Assembly: GCA_951406725.2 (NCBI GenBank)
Contig: OX597825.1
Location: 15,024,001-15,148,000 of the forward strand
Direction: 5' to 3'
DNA from: Octopus vulgaris
Taxonomy: Eukaryota
Length of the DNA stretch: 124,000 nt
Shown: positions 18,080 through 120,473 of the stretch, in pieces
Position numbering within the stretch: position 1 is the first letter of the stretch
Layout: each line of letters starts with the position of its first letter
The notes under the pieces: generated by a model
Seen by the model: the letters and a program-made list of their open reading frames with translations, nothing else
What the model was told of the DNA's origin: nothing
The model's database searches: none
Program-made: the position numbers and the translations under genes

Positions 18080-19330
18080 ACATGCAGCCGCAGTTTAAAG
18101 ATGCTTCAGTAACCTACACCCAGAACAGCTTAGGAGGGCAATGTAGGATTTCTCGTTTCTCTGTGAATCGATTTTGCACACAATGGCAACGCCCTTGTTA
18201 TATTTTCATTATTCTGTGTAAGATCCTGTCTTTTTTTACCTGTGATTCTTCAGTTTTTGGGTGAATCACGCTAATAGCCTCTCTTCTCCCTAAGAACAAT
18301 GAGGAGTGGAAAAGGCGTTAACGACGAAGAAAGGTCTGTCATCACCAAGAAAAGTGCTAAAAGTACTTGCCTTCATGTCATTGCGGAAAAATTAGTTCGT
18401 CATGTGGACACGGTTAGAAATTCTTGAAGGATTCTTCGACGAGGAAGAACCGGTCCGATTAATGGACCTAGAAGTCTATGATAGCTAGCCATTTAAGAAT
18501 TATTGGGTGCAATTTATGTGGGAAAACTGGACAAACAAGCGAAGACATTTTCCCCGACTCCAGACTTCCTCATGCACCGAAAACCACCAGAAATCGTATC
18601 TTCGAGACCCTTGACTGACATAACGGTGGGCCAAGCGGTTGGGTCAATTTTGTAGATGGATGTCACCAACGTTTACGATGTCAACTACAGGGTAGAGGAG
18701 GTATGTTGTAGGCTGGTATCATTGGAGACTGACTTGTTGACCCAATCAGGGTGCCCGAAGGAGTTAAAGAGACCGCTGCCGCCTTCTGCAATCTCCTGAA
18801 TGAGGTATTGGTTCCCTGGCCAGATGACATACCGCTGTTACTTCTAAGGAATCTCGTATTCATGCATAACAACGCTACCTCTCACTCATGTAGGACCATC
18901 CAAACTTTACAACAGCTTTAAGACATACAAGGTGGAAGGCTGATGGTGTGGCCGCCAGCTCGCCGGACCTCAACCCAATCGAAAAATTTTGTTCCATAAC
19001 TAAACAAGCTGTATATGCCTACGGACGCCAATTTACGTCGAAAAATGATTTATTGGTGACCATCAAAGCTGCAGCAGAAGCAGGCCAACCTGCTACTATT
19101 ATGAAATTGACAGAGTCCATGACCAACAGGGACTATTTAAGTTATCAGATGAAATGGCGCACATGTGGCTAAATAATTCATTATGTCGATAAATGTTATA
19201 ACATTATTACGTGTTTCTGTTAAATATATACTTATTGTATGCTTAATATGTATCATTGACTTTCATTATCTGAAAATCAATACGTCTAGATATGGGTTAT
19301 TTTCATTCAAAAGCTATTAGCGCGATTCAC
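18080..19330 (+). mobile_element. decayed Tc1-like transposase
   Basis: Frameshifted MRSGKG.. N-terminus, FMHNNATSH (DNAPSH) and W..SSPDLNPIE (ORF 18948-19172). Confidence 0.85.
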
Positions 19331-50632: not shown

Positions 50633-50830
50633 TAGGTGCATGGGTTAGTGGTTAGGGTGTCAGCATCATGATCGTAAGATTGTGGTTTCGATTCCTGGAC
50701 CGGGCGACGCGTTGTGTTCCTGAGGAAAACACTTCCTTTCACGTTGCTCCAGTCCACTCAGCTGGCAAAAATTAGTAACGCTGCGATGGACTGCCGTCTC
50801 GTCCAGCTGCCGAACATATATGTTAGGCAT
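50633..50830 (+). mobile_element. tRNA-headed CORE-like SINE, chimeric tail
   Basis: A/B boxes, then tgtgttcctgaggaaaacac...ccactcagctgg. Confidence 0.75.
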
Positions 50831-50849
50831 TAAAAGGGCGCATTGTTTG

Positions 50850-50891
<42 letters not shown>

Positions 50892-50899
50892 ATGTATAC

Positions 50900-51120
50900 T
50901 CTCTCTCTTTTACTTGTTTCACTAATTTGACCTCGGCCATGCTGGAACACCGCCTTTAGTCGAACAAATCGACCCCAGGACTTATTCTTTGTAAGCCTAG
51001 TACTTATTCTATCGGTTTCTTTTGCCGAACCGCTAGGTTACGCGGCCGTAAACACACCAGCATCTGTTGTCAAGCGATGTTGGGAGGACAAACACCGACA
51101 CACAAACACCCACACCCATC
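50900..51120 (-). mobile_element. SINE family C, 3' half (its probable 5' half is at 55590-55740)
   Basis: Matches the 3' half of full copies and ends at the internal microsatellite. Confidence 0.85.
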
Positions 51121-51128
51121 CCCCCCCC

Positions 51129-51169
<41 letters not shown>

Positions 51170-51291
51170 ATGTCGCACGTTCGGATACCTCTACTACTCT
51201 GTTTCTTTATTAGCCACAAGGGCCCAAACATAAAGGGGAACAAACAAAGAGAGACAGGACACCACAGAGAGGACAATACATAGAACGAATA

Positions 51292-51451
51292 AGGCGGCGA
51301 TCTAGCAGAAACCTTAGCACGCCAGGCGAAATGCGTAGCCGTATTTCGTCTGCCGTTACGTTCTGAGTTCAAATTCCGGCGAGGTCGACTTTGACCTTCA
51401 TCCTTTCATCCTCTCTGTGTTTAGCCCCTTTGAAGGTAGTAAAGAAATAGA
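51292..51451 (+). mobile_element. SINE family B with internal deletion
   Basis: 17-bp TSD aatacatagaacgaata (51275-51291 / 51452-51468). Confidence 0.92.
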
Positions 51452-51574
51452 AATACATAGAACGAATATGATGAGATCATTATATAATAATGGGGTTATG
51501 AATGGCTGCATGCGCCACGTATCACGTCACATGCATCACCATTAATATTTTTAAACTGTCCGTTTTTATCATAT

Positions 51575-51948
51575 ACTAGCAGTATCGCCCGGCGTTGCTC
51601 AGGTTTGTAAGGGAAATAACTATAAAGCATTTTTAGAGAGTTATAGCCAAAAAATAGAAAAAAAATGATGGTAAATTTTTTTTCAGAGTTAAAAAAGGTG
51701 GAGTTGCGTCCCCTAGACGGTCTGTGGTTTGGGTTTCTGATTCTCGACCCCATGTCGAATTTATCGATTTTTTCAGAACTGGGGGAACTTTTCAAAATTT
51801 TCGCCGCGTTAGTTTTGAATTATGACATTGGGCTATGTGTGTGTCAAGTTTCATCAGAATCGGTTGAAAGCCGTGGTCAGGGTGAGGGTACGAGAAAACA
51901 GACACACAGAAAACGCACAGACAAACTGCCGTTTATATAGAGAGAGAT
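51575..51948 (+). mobile_element. non-autonomous rolling-circle (Helentron/HINE-like) element
   Basis: Begins actagcagtatcgcccggcgttgctc, ends cagacaaactgcc..tatatagagagagat; same 5' end at 118079. Confidence 0.7.
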
Positions 51949-53766
51949 TTAACTAACAATGAATTATCGTCTACCATTACAATTATTTGAAACCTTATAT
52001 GTTCTCTAAAAATGTTCTTCTATTTTCCGATATTATTAAACATAACATAAAACACTTACTCTTTCTTTTTTTCCCTTTTTCTTTTATTTTTTCTTGTCGC
52101 TTTCACATACTTATTTATTTTTAGTAATATTTCATTAGTGGTTCGATTTATACTAAATTCACTTCTGGTGGCAATTCTTTGAATTCCACACCCTTATTCC
52201 TGATGGGTCGATATTATCTCCACACATTTCTTGTAGTCTTTTATAACTTTCCTTTTCAATTACTATCGCCTTCATATCCTCTGCATATATGTATGCTGGT
52301 ATCTTTACCCTGCTTCAATATTCTTCGTGTAGGTTACGTAATACCATACACCGTCTCCTTTATTTTGGCTTTTCTGTTCTCTCTTTTCCTCCTCCACTCT
52401 AAACACTCTTTCCAATTCTTCTTCGGCCAGCTGAATTTCCGAATCCTTTTCTACCGGAGCAACTGGTATTTTTAATAGTAGCTCCATTTTCTTTTTACTT
52501 TCGTTCTCGGCCTTTTGTCCTCCTTTCTGCTGACCTCCTTCACGGTTTCTTTTCTCATATCTTCTCTCTTCGTTTTTCTGGCGGAGAACCATTCCCTCCA
52601 CTCCTCCTTCTCTTTTTCTTTTACAATAGTCATATCATCATCAGATTCCTTTGTCTCAACCTGTTCCTACCTGGCCCTCGCTCTCTTGTATTCCCACCTG
52701 CTCTGCTTGTTGCGTTTTTCTGGGTGCATCATGGCTTCGTCTGGCCTTTCTCACCACATCCAAAACATACAGACGGCCTGCCCTCCACCTTCATTCTCAT
52801 TGCAAAGCCGTCAGACAAAACTATCTCCTCGGGCACTCCTATTTAAATCGTCCACTGTGCCTGGATAGTGAGCTCTATCCCATAGCCCCAGTAGTCGAGC
52901 TTGTTGGTTCTAGTGGCCTTTAATATTTTTGCTCCGTCCTTCATATTATACATTATGGCTGTCATGAGCCATGCCTCTTCCAGTTCAGGGGGTACTTGGG
53001 CTACTCGTACTCTGGCCACACGTTTTCCGCAATAAGACGGCAAGAGTACCCACTCCTCCGATCGTATTGCCTCTGTATCATACTTTATTCCCTCTCCTTT
53101 TGACGTGAAGTGCACATCTACGGTGGCATACCTCCTTCCTCTTGTACTAAAACTTGTTAGCTTTTTAATATTTTCCAAAACATTTTCTAACTCCTCCACT
53201 GTCGCATCTCTATTTTCCTTGTAGCAATTCTCATAGTCTTATAGGTAACTGTTCTCTTCATTATGCTGTTTGTCAGCTCTGCGAGTGACGTCAACTTCAA
53301 CGTCTCACCCTGCTTCCCCAGTAGCTTTTCGCATGCTTTCATTTTTTGGGGGTTCGACTTTGATTTCAAAAGGCTCCAACGTTCTTTCTTCTGCTCCCTT
53401 TACAGTTGCGGCCGCATATTGTGGCCGCCCGCTGGCGCCTTATACATTTTTCCTCAATGGGAAAATTTAACACAATAAAATTTTAACAATATTAACAAAC
53501 AACAATAACGTACAATCAATTAACTCTCTACTCAACTTCAAAAATATCACCTGTTACTCCGCTCTACTCTCGACACGTTTCTTTATTTTTCACCCTGGCC
53601 ACTAACACAGAGGGGGACACTAAAAGGACAAACACAACACCACAGTGGGGACAATAAGCATAAAACGAATGAGGCTGAATATTATATAATAATGGAAAAT
53701 GAAATGGCTGCATGGGCCCCACTCCTCATGCAGTATCATTTGAACGTTTGTACACACTATATAACA

Positions 53767-55060
53767 AACGTGTTATTTTGTGTGTTGTGTTTTTTTCTGA
53801 ATTATCATTTTGTTTCCTCTTTTTCCTTCAAAGCAATTTTTCATTTCCTTTTTCCTTTTAAAAAAAAAACAAAGTAATTTTACTTACTGTTTTTTTCCTT
53901 TTTAATGTCTCATATAAGGCTCCAGTTCTGTGAGTTCAATTACTGGTGGCAGTTCATCGAACTCCAACAATACTCGGGGTGGGTCAATCTTATTTCCGCA
54001 CATATCTACAAGTTTTTTATAAATTTCTTTATCGACCACAATGGCCTTTACATTTTCTGAGTATACGTCTCTGGGTAATTTTACTCTTATGATGTGTTTA
54101 AATTTCACAATTCTTTTTTCCACTTCCTTGTTTTTAGCATAAGTTACAAAATTCCACTTGTTCTTTCCCCGTCTAGGTTTTTTCCTTTCTGCTTTCTCTA
54201 CCTCTCTTGTTATATATGCCTCTATATTACTTTCCTCCTCCGATTCTGAAACCTTCTCCTTCTCTGTCTCTATTGTAAACAGTTTCTCTATCTCACCCTC
54301 ATGTAGTTGTGCTCCTGAACCTTCCACCAAATCAACTGACATCTTCAACCCCGCTTCCTTCTTCTGTAACTCATTCTCGCACACCTTTTCAATTCTTTTT
54401 CCACTTTCTTTCTCCACCATACTTTTGACATCTTCAAGGCGGTGGGCTGTCAGAAACGTTAGCACGCCGGGCGAAATATGTAGCCGTATTTCGTAGCCGT
54501 ATTTCGTAGCCGTATTTCGTAGCCGTATTTCGTTGTGAGTTCAAATTCCGCCGAGGTCGACTTTGCCTGTCATCCTTTCGGGGGTCGATAAATTAAGTAC
54601 CCGTTACGCACCGGGGCCGATGTAATCGACTTACTCTCTTTGACTGTCCTTGTTTTGTCCTCCCTATGTTTAGCCCCTTGTGAGCAATAAAGAAATACAT
54701 ACTTTTGTCATCTTTCCTTTCCACCTCTTCTTTCTTCTTTTTCTCATTAGCCGGTGGCGGGTTCACTCTTCCGTTCCTTCTTCTTTTTCTTTCAACTAGT
54801 GTGAATCCCTCCTCCGCTGTTTTCTCTTCACTCTCCACATGTACTGCCTCTTCCTTATTCTCTTACATCTCCCCCTCCATTTTTTCTGTGGGCACCACGC
54901 CTTCATGTGGCCTTTCTCACCACATCGAAAGCATACAGGCGGCCTGCCCTCCACCATCCTTCTTAGCGCAAAGCTGTCAGGCAACACTATCTCCTCCGCA
55001 ATCCCATTTAAACACATCAACATCGATAAACAAGCGGTTGACGGGGAATGAAATACAATC
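53767..55060 (-). mobile_element. ORF1/gag-only retroelement, copy B (5'-truncated, interrupted by SINE B)
   Basis: EEIVLPDSFALRRMVEGRPPVCFRCGEKGHMKAWC (CX2CX4HX4C), a K/E-rich linker and RVKLPRDVYSENVKAIVVDKE...IELTELEPYMRH. Confidence 0.8.
54435..54697 (+). mobile_element. SINE family B with an internal 13-mer x4 expansion
   Basis: 17-bp TSD catacttttg(a/t)catctt; (gtagccgtatttc)x4 at 54480-54531. Confidence 0.92.
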
Positions 55061-55085
55061 GCACACACATACACACTCACATATG

Positions 55086-55137
<52 letters not shown>

Positions 55138-55154
55138 TACATATATATAATTAT

Positions 55155-55385
55155 ATCACGTTGCTCCAGTTCACTCAGCTGTAGAAATGAGTTGCGATGT
55201 CACAGGTGCCAAGCTGTATCGACCTTTGTCTTTCCCTTGGATAACACTGGTGACGTGGAGAGGGGAGGCCGGTATGCATGGGCGACTACTGGTCTTCCAT
55301 AAAACAACCTTGCCCAGACTTGTGCCTCAGAGGGTAACTCTCTAGGTGCAAACCCATGGTCACTCATGACCGAAGGGGGTCTTTA
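55155..55385 (+). mobile_element. SINE family A, 5'-truncated
   Basis: cacgttgctccagttcactcagctgtagaaatg...catgaccgaagggggt. Confidence 0.88.
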
Positions 55386-55505
55386 CTTTTATATATATAC
55401 ATATATATAATTATATATATATACATATATACTTATATATATATATATATACATATATATAATTATATATATCTATATATATACATATATATAATTATAT
55501 ATATC

Positions 55506-57304: not shown

Positions 57305-58330
57305 GAAAGGATGAAAGGCAAAGTCGACCTCGGCAGAATTTGGACTCGGAACGTAGCGACAAACGAAATACCTATTTCTTTATTACCCACAAGGGGCTAA
57401 ACATAGAGTGGACAAACAAGGACAGGCGTAGGCATTAATTCGATTACATCGACCACAGTACGTAACTGGTACTAATTTATCGACCCCCGAAAGGATAAAA
57501 GGCAAAGTCGACCTCCGCGCAATTTGAACTCAGACCGTAACGACAGACGAAACACCTATTTCATTATTAACCATAAGGGGCTAAACACAGAGGGGACAAA
57601 CAAGGACAGACATAGGTATTAAGTCGATTACATCGAGCCCAGGGCGTAACTGGTACTTAATTTATCGACCCCGAAAGGATGAAAGGCAAAGTCGACCTCG
57701 GCGGAATTTGAACTCACAACGTAACGACGGACAAAATACTTATTTCTTTATTACCCACAAGGGGCTAAACATAGAGGGGACAAACATGGACAGACATAGG
57801 TATTAAGTCGATTATATTGACCCCAGTGCGTAACTGGTACTTAATTTATCGACCCCGAAAGGATGAAAGGCAAAGTCGACCTCGGCGGAATTTGAACTCA
57901 CAACGTAACGACGGACGAAATACCTATTTCTTTATTACCCAAAAGGGGCTAAACATAGAGGGGACAAACATGGACAGACATAGGTATTAAGTCCATTATA
58001 TCGACCCCAGTGCGTAACTGGTACTTAATTTATCGACCCCGAAAGGATGAAAGGCAAAGTCGACCTCGGCGGAATTTGAACTCAGAACGTAGTAGCAGAC
58101 GAAATACCTATTTCTTTACTACCCAGAAGGGGCTAAACACAGAGAGGACAGACACACGGATTAAATCGAATATACGACCCCAGTGCGTAACTGGCACTTA
58201 TTTAATCGACCCCGAAAAGATGAAAGGCAAAGTCGACCTCGGCGGAGTTTGAACTCACAACTTAACGACAGACGAAATACCGCTAAGCATTTTTCCTGCC
58301 GCGCTAACGTTTCTACCAGCTCGCCGCCTT
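57305..58330 (-). mobile_element. SINE family B concatemer (1 head, 5 complete ~183-bp bodies, 1 partial)
   Basis: aaaggcaaagtcgacc occurs six times at a ~183-bp period; units join tail-to-body at aaagaaatag|gtatttcgtc. Confidence 0.95.
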
Positions 58331-117472: not shown

Positions 117473-118078
117473 TATATATATATATACGTTCTTGTATGTG
117501 GGGGTGTGAATCTTATATTGCCTCATGCATTTATTTCAACTCAGTTTTCAAATTAAAATTCGTACAAAACACAAGCATTTGCTGTTATATATAGGATAGT
117601 TAAATGCATACGAACGACTTCATCAATATTTGTTCAAGAGTTCAAAGCCTCATTGCTTTATTAAAGAGGTTTCTCCTACACATACATCAACCTGAATATA
117701 AATAAATGTATTGGTTTGATGGTTATCACTCTAATATACTTTGTACAAGCTGCATTTTTTTTTACATCGCAACACAGTTGTGGTTTTGTTTACATGCAAA
117801 ACTACGACACGCTGTGATTATGTATATTCTGGGCTAATATTTATATTGTTGACACAAATATATTTTATCTTTTACTACGCTCTATGCAGCTTGGGGTTTT
117901 TTGAGAACGCAGTGTTTTTAATAAACTGTTTCGATACGTTCATATAAAATATTAATTCTGTAGCACTTAATGACTACAAGTATTGGTTTTTATATTAGAC
118001 TAATCATGCTATAACGATATTTAGTTACCAATGGTTGATTAGTTCTTGAAGATGCTGATAAAAACCACTTATAACATC

Positions 118079-118478
118079 ACTAGCAGTATCGCCCGGCGTT
118101 GCTCGGGTTTGTAAGGGAAATAACTATAAAGCATTTTTAGAGAGTTATAGCCGCCGAAAAATAGCAAAAAATGCATTAAAAATGGAAAAAATATGATGGT
118201 AAATTTTTGTTTAAATCGTTGACTCATCGTAGACATTTTTAGAGAGTTACGTCCCTTATATTTAAAAATAATATGCATTAAAATGGAAAAAAGTGATGGT
118301 AAATTATTTTTAAAATCGTAGACTCATTGTAGACGCGCGCTAATACCCAGAAGGGCTCGATATGAATCACGACTATAAGATACCCGGTTTTGGTTAAACT
118401 GCACCGCAAAATGTGGGAGTAGTTAGGAATCTAAATCGGAGTAGACAGGCACACAACCTTACTTTTATATATAAAGAT
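118079..118478 (+). mobile_element. Helentron-like non-autonomous element (5' end shared with 51575)
   Basis: actagcagtatcgcccggcgttgctcgggtttgtaagggaaataactataaagc...ttttatatataaagat. Confidence 0.7.
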
Positions 118479-120057: not shown

Positions 120058-120473
120058 ATTTCTTTATTGCTCACAAGGGGACTAACATAGAGGGGGCAAA
120101 CAAGGACAGACAAACGGATTAAGTCGATTACATCGACCCCAGTGCGTAATTGGTACTTAATTTATCGACCCCGAAAGGATGAAAGGCAAAGTCGACCTCG
120201 GCGGAATTTGAATTCAGAAAGTAATGGAAGACGAAATACCTATTTCTTCACTACCCACAAGGGGCTAATCACAGAGAGAACAAACATGGACAGACAAACG
120301 GATTAAGTCGATTATATCGATCCCAGTGCGTAACTTGTACTTGTTTAATCGACCTCGAAAGGATGAAAGGCAATGTCAACCTCGGCGGAATTTGAACTCA
120401 GAACGTAACGACAGACGAACTACCGCTAAAGCATTTCACCCGGCGTGCTAACGATTCTGCCAGCTCGCCACCT
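120058..120473 (-). mobile_element. SINE family B dimer
   Basis: One head and two bodies joined at gaagaaatag|gtatttcgtc, the same junction as the 57.3-58.3-kb array. Confidence 0.92.

What the first reader, a model, noticed from the sequence alone, without database searches (positions are those of the whole stretch)
51166..55060. Head-to-tail pair of ORF1(gag)-only retroelements with no reverse transcriptase
Seen in sequence: two diverged paralogues lie in direct tandem on the minus strand. Each encodes one protein: basic N-terminus, a putative RRM-like region, a VEGRP..CX2CX4HX4C knuckle, a K/E-rich linker and a conserved ~60-aa C-terminal domain (RVKLP..Y.E.VKAIV..KE.YK.L..MCG..IDP...EF.ELPP). 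A 3' UTR ending in aataaagaaa follows directly, with no EN/RT, and copy B's 3' end abuts copy A's 5' end. Established: the knuckle context resembles L1/Tx1-type ORF1; Drosophila HeT-A is a gag-only non-LTR element that forms head-to-tail arrays; Tx1-clade elements are often target-specific. Inference: a non-autonomous gag-only family that inserts repeatedly at one target. The copies are too diverged to be a simple local duplication.
Basis: partly seen in the sequence, partly recalled or inferred. Interest (0 to 1): 0.82.

Follow-up and report, generated by a model that had tools for sequence, protein, structure and literature searches.

The report
Gag-only LINE relatives stacked head-to-tail
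Two decayed copies of an octopus retroelement that encodes only a gag-like (ORF1) protein and no reverse transcriptase lie head to tail, because this family borrows the 3' tail of a LINE and inserts again and again into one short repeated target sequence.

Summary
On the minus strand, copy B (55012-53577, 5'-truncated) is followed directly by copy A (53576-51201, full 5' end, heavily decayed). Each has a CCHC knuckle, a K/E-rich linker, a conserved C-terminal domain and about 330 nt of 3' UTR ending AATAAAGAAAC. Neither has EN or RT.

All relatives with a named source are from Octopus. In four other loci, every copy whose ORF end could be read goes straight into the same 3' UTR (8 of 8). A and B belong to different subfamilies, so this is not a local duplication.

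The last 60 nt or so of the 3' UTR is shared with the abundant tRNA-related SINE. It is also shared with a LINE fragment (L1-type endonuclease, zf-RVT) in an O. bimaculoides array.

That array of four units sits inside a ~165-nt unit, "X". It has a 13-bp target duplication just downstream of X's TATA box, and an uninterrupted X exists elsewhere. The 36 nt after copy A match X.

Best reading: a non-autonomous ORF1-only LINE lineage (like HAL1 or HeT-A) with Tx1-like target preference. The RRM claim, the LINE's clade and the nature of X remain open.

The parts
53577..55012 (-). Copy B: 5'-truncated ORF1-only element, starting just before the knuckle.
   Evidence: Homology to copy A and to the Octopus proteins P0019 and P0020. 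Boundaries.
54892..54933 (-). Copy B CCHC zinc knuckle (CFRCGEKGHMKAWC), intact.
   Evidence: Pfam zf-CCHC, E 1.8e-5. Coordinates.
54433..54697 (+). tRNA-related SINE inserted in copy B's coding sequence, antisense to the element. Its 15-bp target duplications are at 54712-54698 and 54432-54418.
   Evidence: Many copies of this SINE are in the window. Target duplication GATGWCAAAAGTATG. The SINE tail is read.
53902..54432 (-). Copy B K/E-rich linker and C-terminal domain, still an open frame, with its stop at 53904-53902.
   Evidence: Lies within the 187-aa ORF 54465-53902. It has 18 relatives among 1.84 billion representative proteins. AlphaFold model pLDDT 80.
53577..53901 (-). Copy B 3' UTR. 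It holds a palindrome (53733-53708), a TATA-like 15-mer (53695-53681) and a ~60-nt tail ending AATAAAGAAAC.
   Evidence: Aligned with the 3' UTRs of copy A, L001-L004, the L004 LINE and the SINE.
53448..53576 (-). Copy A 5' leader. It begins with target-like motifs: GTGTCGAGAGTAGAGCGG, and GTTGAGTAGAGAG at 53536-53524.
   Evidence: Colinear with the 5' leaders of L004 copies 1 and 2. Resembles X positions 96-138, score 40.5 against a shuffle 95th percentile of 35 and maximum of 43.
52121..53447 (-). Copy A degraded ORF1: N-terminal region, knuckle remnant at 52767-52726, linker and C-terminal domain.
   Evidence: Three-frame reading, tblastn, and alignment to L004 copy 2 and P0020.
51201..52120 (-). 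Copy A 3' UTR, interrupted by two later insertions. It ends in AATAAAGAAAC at 51211-51201.
   Evidence: Piecewise alignment to copy B's 3' UTR. Tail census.
51572..51949 (-). Helitron-like insertion in copy A's 3' UTR. It reads 5'-TC...CTAG-3', has a GC hairpin, and sits between an A and a T.
   Evidence: Sequence reading. 91% match to window 118069-118171.
51291..51451 (+). 5'-truncated SINE inserted in copy A's 3' UTR. Its 16-bp target duplications are at 51467-51452 and 51290-51275.
51165..51200 (-). Remnant of the target unit X, directly after copy A's tail.
   Evidence: Aligns to X positions 130-164 of L002. Score 38, against a maximum of 34 in 300 shuffles.

Best explanation
Copies A and B are two independently inserted, now dead, members of an octopod family of non-autonomous non-LTR retroelements.

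A full element has five parts in order:
- a ~130-160-nt leader;
- one ORF1/gag-like gene;
- the gene itself made of an N-terminal region, one CCHC knuckle, a K/E-rich linker and an ~85-aa C-terminal alpha/beta domain;
- a ~300-nt 3' UTR;
- no endonuclease or reverse transcriptase.

The last ~60 nt of the 3' UTR (...TGTCTGTCCTTGT..TGTCCCCTCTGTGTT...AATAAAGAAA) is shared with an L1/Tx1-like LINE and with the genome's abundant tRNA-related SINE. I infer that the LINE's reverse transcriptase recognises this tail and copies the gag-only RNA in trans by target-primed reverse transcription.

Insertion is strongly biased to one short repeated unit, X (~165 nt). The site is at GTTGAGTAGCAG-type motifs about 25-35 nt downstream of X's TATA box, and insertion makes a ~13-bp target duplication. 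The duplication regenerates the motif, X carries four such motifs, and the elements' own leaders start with it. Later insertions therefore land next to earlier ones. This builds head-to-tail arrays of different subfamilies and ages.

In the window, B (the younger copy, 5'-truncated) lies upstream of A (the older copy, full-length), and the rest of X follows A.

Shown here: the anatomy, the shared tail, the recurrence of arrays, the filled and empty X sites with a target duplication, subfamily membership, and purifying selection on the ORF.

Inferred: trans-mobilisation by that LINE, use of X's promoter, and sequential rather than simultaneous insertion.
For: Anatomy and homology:
- establish the two copies and their similarity.
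- The family is narrow. The C-terminal domain has 18 hits among 1.84 billion representative proteins. Every hit that carries a source name is O. bimaculoides or O. sinensis, three are unnamed Logan assemblies, and one is a spurious match to a repetitive protein from an ENA metagenome.

No ORF2:
- In 8 of 8 copies the ORF stop runs into the same 3' UTR.

Shared tail:
- The tail is shared by the gag-only copies, the SINE and the LINE fragment in L004.
- Copy A's tail against a SINE in L001 gives blastn 84% over 58 nt, E 3.5e-12.
- The L004 LINE fragment has Exo_endo_phos (E 1.4e-10) and zf-RVT (E 5e-10).
- Its closest solved structure is the human L1 ORF2p endonuclease, E 8e-4.

Target:
- The left flank of the L004 array equals X positions 16-106 (92% identity).
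- The right flank equals X positions 94-178 (96% identity).
- The two flanks overlap by 13 bp, and an uninterrupted X lies at L002 3030-2865.
- Every internal junction of the array carries a GTTGAGCAGCAG-like 12-mer.
- The window flank 51200-51165 equals X positions 130-164, a score above all 300 shuffles.

Independent origin of A and B:
- A is 72% identical to P0003 and 51% to B, while B is 78% identical to P0019.
- A against B gives pN/pS 0.58, bootstrap interval 0.40-0.90.
- Between subfamilies pS is saturated at 0.65-0.9 while pN is 0.2-0.4.
- A carries at least 10 lesions; B carries 2 plus one SINE.

Literature:
- HAL1 is a non-autonomous L1 derivative that encodes only ORF1p (PMC5753468).
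- Many Tx1-clade elements are target-specific, some for LTR elements or DNA transposons (PMC4494074).
- R1 tandems carry a target duplication in the junction, which indicates repeated insertion (PMC5932611).
Against: - X's left half is not found upstream of copy B. There B abuts a fragment of another SINE.
- The resemblance of the B|A spacer to X is marginal (40.5, against a shuffle maximum of 43).
- The junctions in L002 and L003 do not match X significantly.
- SINE copies with the same tail are dispersed, with unrelated 15-16-bp target duplications.
- The L001 copy and the copy inside the RGS gene model P0007 are not visibly in X. Specificity is therefore a preference, and it is not explained by the tail alone.
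- Only five loci were seen, and all were reached through annotated proteins, so the sample is biased.
- No intact autonomous partner was seen. The L004 LINE is internally deleted or chimeric, and its RT core lies in an assembly gap.
- The dN/dS values come from short, protein-guided alignments.
Confidence: 0.65

Rival explanations
1. Single-event concatemer. During one target-primed reverse transcription, the reverse transcriptase finished copying one RNA (A) to its 5' end. It then jumped to the 3' tail of a second RNA (B) and stopped early. The pair was born together.
For: - All junctions seen join a tail to a full 5' end, and in the window the upstream-most copy is the truncated one.
- All partners carry the same tail.
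- The whole L004 array is enclosed by one 13-bp duplication.
Against: - A is about three times more decayed per kb than B, though this is weak, p about 0.05.
- The internal junctions carry the target 12-mer, as repeated insertion predicts. RNAs that start with that 12-mer would give the same picture.
- In L004 the upstream-most copy is full-length.
Confidence: 0.17
2. Ordinary dead LINE copies. Each gag-only copy arose separately by deletion of ORF2 from an autonomous LINE, and there is no self-sustaining gag-only lineage.
For: - One unit in L004 joins an ORF1 N-terminus directly to a truncated endonuclease, so internal deletions or chimeras do occur.
- The 3' UTRs of the LINE and of the gag-only copies are homologous over about 150 nt.
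Against: - The same arrangement, ORF1 stop followed by the 3' UTR, occurs in 8 of 8 copies. These copies differ by 25-55% at the protein level and come from at least two named Octopus species, plus one unnamed octopod assembly (L003).
- The ORF evolved under purifying selection across those lineages.
- The ORF1 N-terminus attached to the LINE is only 24% identical to that of the gag-only copies.
Confidence: 0.1
3. A gag-only LTR retrotransposon. What looks like '3' UTR plus 5' leader' would be an LTR shared between neighbouring internal regions (LTR-gag-LTR-gag-LTR).
For: - The 3' UTR has a TATA-like box about 100 nt before an AATAAA, followed by a short stretch and the next leader, which is an LTR-like layout.
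- In L003 a DUF7083 gag N-terminus of Gypsy type follows the junction.
Against: - L004 copy 1 has a complete leader but no such 'LTR' upstream. It is flanked by X instead.
- The retroposed SINE and the EN/RT LINE end at exactly the same AATAAAGAAA position.
- SINE target duplications are 15-16 bp and the array's is 13 bp, not the 4-6 bp of an integrase.
- After copy A the homology stops, and X follows.
Confidence: 0.03
4. Local tandem duplication of one copy (or of a host gag-derived gene), followed by neutral divergence.
For: The two units are adjacent and in the same orientation. Their overall divergence is similar in the coding sequence and the UTR.
Against: - Each copy is much closer to copies elsewhere than to its neighbour.
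- pN/pS is below 1.
- The 3' UTR (p about 0.22) is less diverged than the synonymous sites (pS 0.46).
- The two copies have different 5' extents.
- Arrays elsewhere mix very different subfamilies.
- Copies are dispersed on several chromosomes, 5'-truncated and frameshifted, which does not fit a host gene cluster.
Confidence: 0.03

Closest known systems
HAL1 ('half-L1') of mammals
   Same: A non-autonomous LINE derivative that keeps ORF1 and a LINE 3' end but has no ORF2, and that spreads as its own family (PMC5753468).
   Different: - HAL1 ORF1p is the mammalian L1 type. Here the protein has a CCHC knuckle and a C-terminal domain found so far only in octopods.
- HAL1 is dispersed and A-tailed. 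This family has a specific non-poly(A) tail and prefers one target.
Drosophila HeT-A (with TART/TAHRE)
   Same: Gag-only, dependent on another element's reverse transcriptase, and found in head-to-tail arrays built by repeated insertion at the same place (PMC5932611 for telomeric tandems; the rest from general knowledge).
   Different: - HeT-A adds to chromosome ends and belongs to the Jockey clade, with a different gag.
- Here the arrays are internal, inside a short repeated unit X, with a 13-bp target duplication.
- A HeT-A-like promoter in the 3' UTR is only a possibility here.
Tx1-clade target-specific LINEs (Tx1L in Tx1D, Keno, Kibi, Koshi, crocodilian Tx1 in Mariner or LTR elements)
   Same: An APE-type LINE with a preference for one repeated target, including other transposable elements (PMC4494074). 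The partner fragment has an L1-type endonuclease and zf-RVT.
   Different: Clade membership is not shown, because the RT core lies in an assembly gap. Most units in the arrays are gag-only rather than the LINE itself.
R1 tandem arrays in Drosophila rDNA
   Same: Tandem elements separated by a duplicated piece of the target, which is explained by repeated insertion into one site (PMC5932611).
   Different: R1 is autonomous and its target is 28S rDNA. Here the units are different subfamilies of a non-autonomous family, and the target is a ~165-nt unit of unknown nature.
LINE-SINE pairs with a common 3' tail (stringent type, e.g. UnaL2/UnaSINE1)
   Same: About 60 nt of 3' end is shared between a LINE, a tRNA-related SINE and the gag-only elements, and all three end at the same base.
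   Different: A protein-coding third partner is unusual. No conserved stem-loop was predicted in the tail.

Membership tests
Non-LTR (LINE-mobilised) retroposon | No LTRs; the element ends at a defined 3' terminus shared with an EN/RT-encoding LINE. | tested here: met
   The tail is shared with the L004 LINE fragment (Exo_endo_phos, zf-RVT) and with the SINE, and all end at AATAAAGAAA. L004 copy 1 has no upstream copy of the 3' UTR.
Non-LTR (LINE-mobilised) retroposon | Target duplications of roughly 10-20 bp, and frequent 5' truncation. | tested here: met
   A 13-bp duplication of X flanks the L004 array. Copy B, L001, L003 and P0004/P0008-type copies are 5'-truncated. No duplication could be defined for the window pair itself.
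ORF1-only non-autonomous LINE derivative (the HAL1 / HeT-A kind) | A single gag/ORF1-like ORF followed directly by the 3' UTR, with no EN/RT, in many diverged copies. | tested here: met
   8 of 8 copies with a readable ORF end.
ORF1-only non-autonomous LINE derivative (the HAL1 / HeT-A kind) | The ORF was kept by selection while the lineage diversified. | tested here: met
   pN/pS is 0.3-0.6 with synonymous sites saturated between subfamilies. Caveat: short, protein-guided alignments.
ORF1-only non-autonomous LINE derivative (the HAL1 / HeT-A kind) | Mobilised in trans by the reverse transcriptase of a partner LINE. | not testable with these tools
   Only inferred, from the shared tail and from co-residence with a LINE fragment in the L004 array.
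HAL1 proper | ORF1p of the mammalian L1 type (coiled coil, RRM, CTD), derived from L1. | tested here: not met
   The protein has a CCHC knuckle. Neither Pfam, nor sequence and profile searches of the PDB chains, nor Foldseek of the C-terminal domain model gave a match to L1 ORF1p.
HeT-A proper | Addition to chromosome ends, and a Jockey-clade gag. | tested here: not met
   The arrays are internal: X flanks the L004 array on both sides. The protein has a single knuckle and a family-specific C-terminal domain. The chromosomal position of the window itself is unknown.
Tx1 clade of LINEs (for the partner) | The RT domain groups with Tx1 in a phylogeny. | not testable with these tools
   The RT core of the only LINE fragment seen lies in the assembly gap L004 15547-16870, and no reference set was on hand.
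Tx1 clade of LINEs (for the partner) | An APE endonuclease together with target-sequence preference. | tested here: met
   Endonuclease: Pfam E 1.4e-10, nearest PDB entry L1 ORF2p EN. Target X with a filled and an empty site. These features are shared with, but not exclusive to, Tx1.
Type-I LINE ORF1p (RRM plus CCHC knuckle) | A CCHC zinc knuckle. | tested here: met
   zf-CCHC at E 1.8e-5 in copy B and 4.7e-5 in P0003.
Type-I LINE ORF1p (RRM plus CCHC knuckle) | An RRM fold upstream of the knuckle. | tested here: inconclusive
   The AlphaFold model of the N-terminal region is unreliable (pLDDT 46), and there was no Pfam or PDB sequence hit. The C-terminal domain is predicted as beta-alpha-beta-beta-alpha-beta (pLDDT 80). 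It has only insignificant ferredoxin-like matches, best E 0.07.
LTR retrotransposon (gag-only derivative) | Identical long terminal repeats at both ends, a primer-binding site, and 4-6-bp target duplications. | tested here: not met
   L004 copy 1 lacks the upstream repeat, and the duplication is 13 bp.

The most novel reading that the evidence does not exclude
The gag-only elements may 'promote in tandem', as HeT-A does.

The basis is a conserved TATA-like box and palindrome in the 3' UTR. An identical 15-mer, CCATTATTATATAAT, is present in both A and B about 100 nt before the tail end. These could drive transcription of the next element downstream. X's own TATA box would drive the first element.

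On this reading the arrays would be working transcription units, not graveyards. The family would then be a long-lived gag-only parasite with three features:
- its own RNA-binding C-terminal domain;
- a borrowed reverse transcriptase;
- an LTR-like promoter logic that evolved independently of flies and retroviruses.
Probability: 0.15. Interest if true: 0.7.

Novelty: new variant of a known kind. Interest (0 to 1): 0.5.

Why it matters
Gag-only non-LTR elements that persist as lineages are rare. HeT-A and HAL1 are the textbook cases.

An octopod example would show that the strategy of keeping the RNA chaperone and borrowing the polymerase arose again in molluscs. This one combines four features:
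- a new C-terminal domain;
- purifying selection on its ORF;
- a 3' tail shared with both a LINE and the genome's dominant SINE;
- a preference for one promoter-bearing target.

It also gives a concrete three-partner system (LINE, gag-only element, SINE) in a genome known for SINE and LINE expansion. In that system, tail recognition, the need for ORF1p in cis or in trans, and target choice could all be tested.

In practice, these copies are annotated as 'CCHC-type domain-containing' or 'uncharacterized' proteins. They are also read into host gene models such as the RGS-domain model P0007. Recognising the family would clean up octopus annotation.

Tried and rejected
LTR hypothesis:
- It was raised because of the TATA...AATAAA layout, TG..CA-like ends and the DUF7083 gag in L003.
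- It was rejected once L004 copy 1 proved to lack the upstream repeat and the LINE and SINE proved to end at the same base.

'Third copy' after A:
- The 36 nt after copy A's tail first looked like the start of another copy.
- It matches the target X instead.

Penelope-like partial tandem with ribozymes:
- Rfam found nothing in the window at gathering thresholds, and no hammerhead or tRNA at E <= 1 in 50800-55400. ARAGORN found no tRNA gene.

Conserved structure in the shared tail:
- RNAalifold predicted no pairs.

Structure and family searches:
- The fold of the N-terminal region came out at low confidence.
- Foldseek of the C-terminal model gave no significant match.
- Profile searches against PDB sequences found only zinc knuckles.

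Searches limited by the tools:
- The word-index protein searches were swamped by the K/E-rich linker or found a single relative.
- Exact look-ups of P0003, P0005 and P0020 found no contig.

Searches in the wrong place:
- A phage-collection search and a metagenome scan found nothing, as expected for octopus DNA.

Similarity of the L002 and L003 junctions to X is not above shuffles.


Full report
WHAT IS THERE

Read on the minus strand, the region holds two homologous units in direct tandem.

Copy B (55012-53577) starts abruptly just before a CCHC knuckle:
- The knuckle (CFRCGEKGHMKAWC, 54933-54892) is intact.
- It has one frameshift and one stop.
- A 265-nt SINE lies in its coding sequence, with 15-bp target duplications.
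- A still-open 177-codon stretch follows, comprising the K/E-rich linker and the C-terminal domain, with its stop at 53904-53902.
- A 325-nt 3' UTR ends in AATAAAGAAAC (53587-53577).

Copy A follows at once (53576-51201):
- It has a 129-nt leader and an ATG at 53447 (MYKAPAGG...).
- Its ORF is broken by at least 5 frameshifts, at least 4 stops and one deletion, and the knuckle has H->Q.
- Its stop is at 52123-52121.
- Its 3' UTR is interrupted by a Helitron-like insert and a second SINE (16-bp duplications), and again ends in AATAAAGAAAC (51211-51201).

The two copies are clearly related:
- The knuckle region is 83% identical over 133 nt (E 8e-36).
- The C-terminal domain is about 51-58% identical at the protein level.
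- The 3' UTRs are about 75-80% identical.

There is no EN or RT reading frame here or anywhere in the 124-kb window. Pfam sees only the knuckle.

WHOSE IT IS

An exhaustive HMMER scan of 1.84 billion representative proteins with B's C-terminal ORF found only 18 relatives.
- Every one that carries a source name is O. bimaculoides or O. sinensis.
- Three come from unnamed Logan assemblies.
- One is a spurious match to a repetitive protein from an ENA metagenome.

The best models, P0003 (386 aa) and P0020 (356 aa), end at the same C-terminus as copies A and B, so the ORF end is real.

Four genomic loci could be fetched:
- L001, from O. sinensis.
- L002 and L004, from two O. bimaculoides chromosomes.
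- L003, a 2.9-kb Logan contig that carries the same SINE.

NO ORF2, REPEATEDLY

In every copy whose ORF end is readable, the stop codon runs into the same A-rich, ~200-330-nt 3' UTR with the same tail. These copies are window A and B, L001, L002 copy 1, L003, and L004 copies 1, 2 and 3.

These copies differ by 25-55% at the protein level. Between subfamilies the synonymous sites are saturated (pS 0.65-0.9) while pN is 0.2-0.4.

The gag-only layout has therefore lasted through long divergence with the ORF under purifying selection. That is the mark of a lineage, not of sporadic deletion products. The alignments are short and guided by protein similarity, so the ratios are rough.

THE TAIL AND THE PARTNER

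The last ~60 nt of the 3' UTR is also the 3' end of the abundant tRNA-related SINE of this genome. It is a pyrimidine-rich stretch followed by AATAAAGAAA. The SINE ends at the same base and is flanked by 15-16-bp duplications.

In L004, the fourth unit of an array consists of:
- a leader and an ORF1-like N-terminus, 24% identical to that of the gag-only copies;
- a direct join to an endonuclease lacking its first ~40 residues (Exo_endo_phos, E 1.4e-10; nearest solved structure the human L1 ORF2p endonuclease);
- an assembly gap;
- the end of an RT protein with zf-RVT (E 5e-10);
- a 3' UTR that is homologous over ~150 nt and ends in the same tail.

So a LINE of the L1/Tx1 type, a SINE and the gag-only family share one 3' module. 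I infer trans-mobilisation by that LINE's reverse transcriptase. Its clade could not be tested because the RT core lies in the gap.

ARRAYS AND THE TARGET

Head-to-tail adjacency is not peculiar to the window.
- L002 has a pair.
- L003 has a copy followed by another unit.
- L004 has four units in a row.
- Gene models P0002 and P0015 run from a C-terminal domain into a knuckle.

The decisive result comes from the flanks of the L004 array.
- The 92 nt before copy 1 match positions 16-106 of a unit X at 92% identity.
- The 84 nt after the LINE tail match positions 94-178 of X at 96% identity.
- An uninterrupted X lies at L002 3030-2865.
- The two flanks overlap by 13 bp (GTTGAGTAGCAGT), which is a target-site duplication.

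X has a TATA box (CATATAAATAGAG) about 25-35 nt upstream of the insertion point. Downstream of it lie four reiterations of an 11-12-nt motif: GTTGAGTAGCAG, TCGAGTAGCAG, TTGTGTAGCGG, TTGAGTAGAG. Every internal junction of the array carries a GTTGAGCAGCAG-like 12-mer right after the preceding tail.

In the window:
- The 36 nt after copy A's tail (51200-51165) align to X positions 130-164 with a score above all 300 shuffles.
- A's leader begins with the same motifs, but this match is marginal (40.5, against a shuffle maximum of 43).

The pair therefore sits in an X unit too.

A junction that carries the duplicated target is what repeated insertion at one site gives, as described for R1 tandems (PMC5932611). 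Preference for a repeated target, including other transposable elements, is typical of the Tx1 clade (PMC4494074).

A AND B ARE SEPARATE ARRIVALS

- In the C-terminal block, A is 72% and 69% identical to P0003 and P0005 but 51% to B.
- B is 78% and 75% identical to P0019 and P0020.
- pN/pS between A and B is 0.58, bootstrap interval 0.40-0.90.
- The UTRs are less diverged than the synonymous sites.
- A is about three times more damaged per kb than B.

A local duplication is excluded. A single event with template jumping between two different RNAs is not excluded (PMC11371274 documents such jumps for R2). It would give the same junctions, and I give it about 0.17.

WHAT DOES NOT FIT

- X's left half is missing upstream of B. 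There B abuts the first ~55 nt of the body of another, composite SINE, and a full body of that SINE lies downstream of A.
- SINE copies with the same tail are dispersed with unrelated duplications.
- The L001 copy and the copy inside the RGS gene model P0007 are not visibly in X, so the specificity is a preference.
- The nature of X is unknown. In L003 a DUF7083 gag of Gypsy type follows the junction, which hints that X could belong to an LTR element. However, the L003 sequence does not match X significantly.

THE PROTEIN

- The N-terminal region could not be modelled (pLDDT 46), so 'RRM-like' stays unverified.
- The C-terminal domain is predicted with fair confidence (pLDDT 80, pTM 0.67) as a beta-alpha-beta-beta-alpha-beta sandwich.
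- It has only insignificant ferredoxin-like matches in the PDB, best E 0.07, and no sequence match.

COMPARISON AND VERDICT

- In function this is the HAL1 or HeT-A strategy: keep ORF1 and borrow the polymerase (PMC5753468).
- In habit it resembles Tx1-like target-specific LINEs and R1 tandems.
- It is not HAL1 or HeT-A itself. The protein type, tail, target and host are all different.

I rate it a new variant of a known kind. It is of moderate interest to transposon biologists and useful for octopus annotation.

A note on method: the broken ORFs were never read through or repaired. All searches used the open pieces or intact relatives.

Noticed in passing
window 57375-58131 and 120059-120263: Head-to-tail arrays (period about 184 bp, five units in the first) of 5'-truncated copies of the same tRNA-related SINE that shares the AATAAAGAAA tail. 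Each unit ends at the tail and the next starts inside the SINE.
   Followed up: partly
L003 1466-1900: A decayed DUF7083 reading frame lies about 350 nt after the tail of a gag-only copy (Pfam E 1.4e-7). DUF7083 is, to my knowledge, the N-terminus of Gypsy-type gag-pol proteins. This suggests the target may belong to an LTR element. A TATA-like box (GGGTATATAAGAG) lies just upstream of the truncated copy.
   Followed up: partly
window 55740-55013 and 51160-50930: A composite SINE (tRNA-like head, then (TA)n(TG)n, then a body) brackets the pair. Its head, microsatellite and the first ~55 nt of its body lie upstream of copy B. A microsatellite plus a full body lie downstream of copy A. This could be a long target duplication, or two separate SINE copies with a rearrangement; it was not resolved.
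   Followed up: partly
window 51572-51949: A Helitron-like non-autonomous insert lies in copy A's 3' UTR. It reads 5'-TC...CTAG-3', has a GC hairpin (CGCCGGGCG) before its end, and sits between an A and a T. It is 91% identical to window 118069-118171.
   Followed up: partly
window 53733-53681 and 51535-51479: Both 3' UTRs keep a palindrome (CTGCATG...CATGCAG in copy B, TGCATG...CATGCA in copy A) and an identical 15-mer, CCATTATTATATAAT, although the surrounding sequence is only about 78% identical. ATTATATAA also occurs in L003 and in L004 copies 1 and 2. This could be a promoter or a protein-binding site.
   Followed up: no
L004 8458-8700, 8926-9160 (minus) and 18158-18400 (plus): Inverted repeats of about 240 bp, 90% identical, flank the X unit that holds the array. 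X may therefore sit inside a foldback or TIR-bearing element, which would recall Tx1L inside Tx1D.
   Followed up: no
P0007 (O. bimaculoides A0A0L8FRC8): An RGS-domain gene model has a 5'-truncated gag-only copy (knuckle to C-terminal domain) read into the middle of its coding sequence. This is either a mis-annotation or an exonised element.
   Followed up: no
L001 10447-10675 and 11103-11520: The O. sinensis copy has also been hit by the same two SINE families. One lies in the coding sequence, with a 14-bp duplication GGTTATGATGTTTC. The other lies in the 3' UTR.
   Followed up: no
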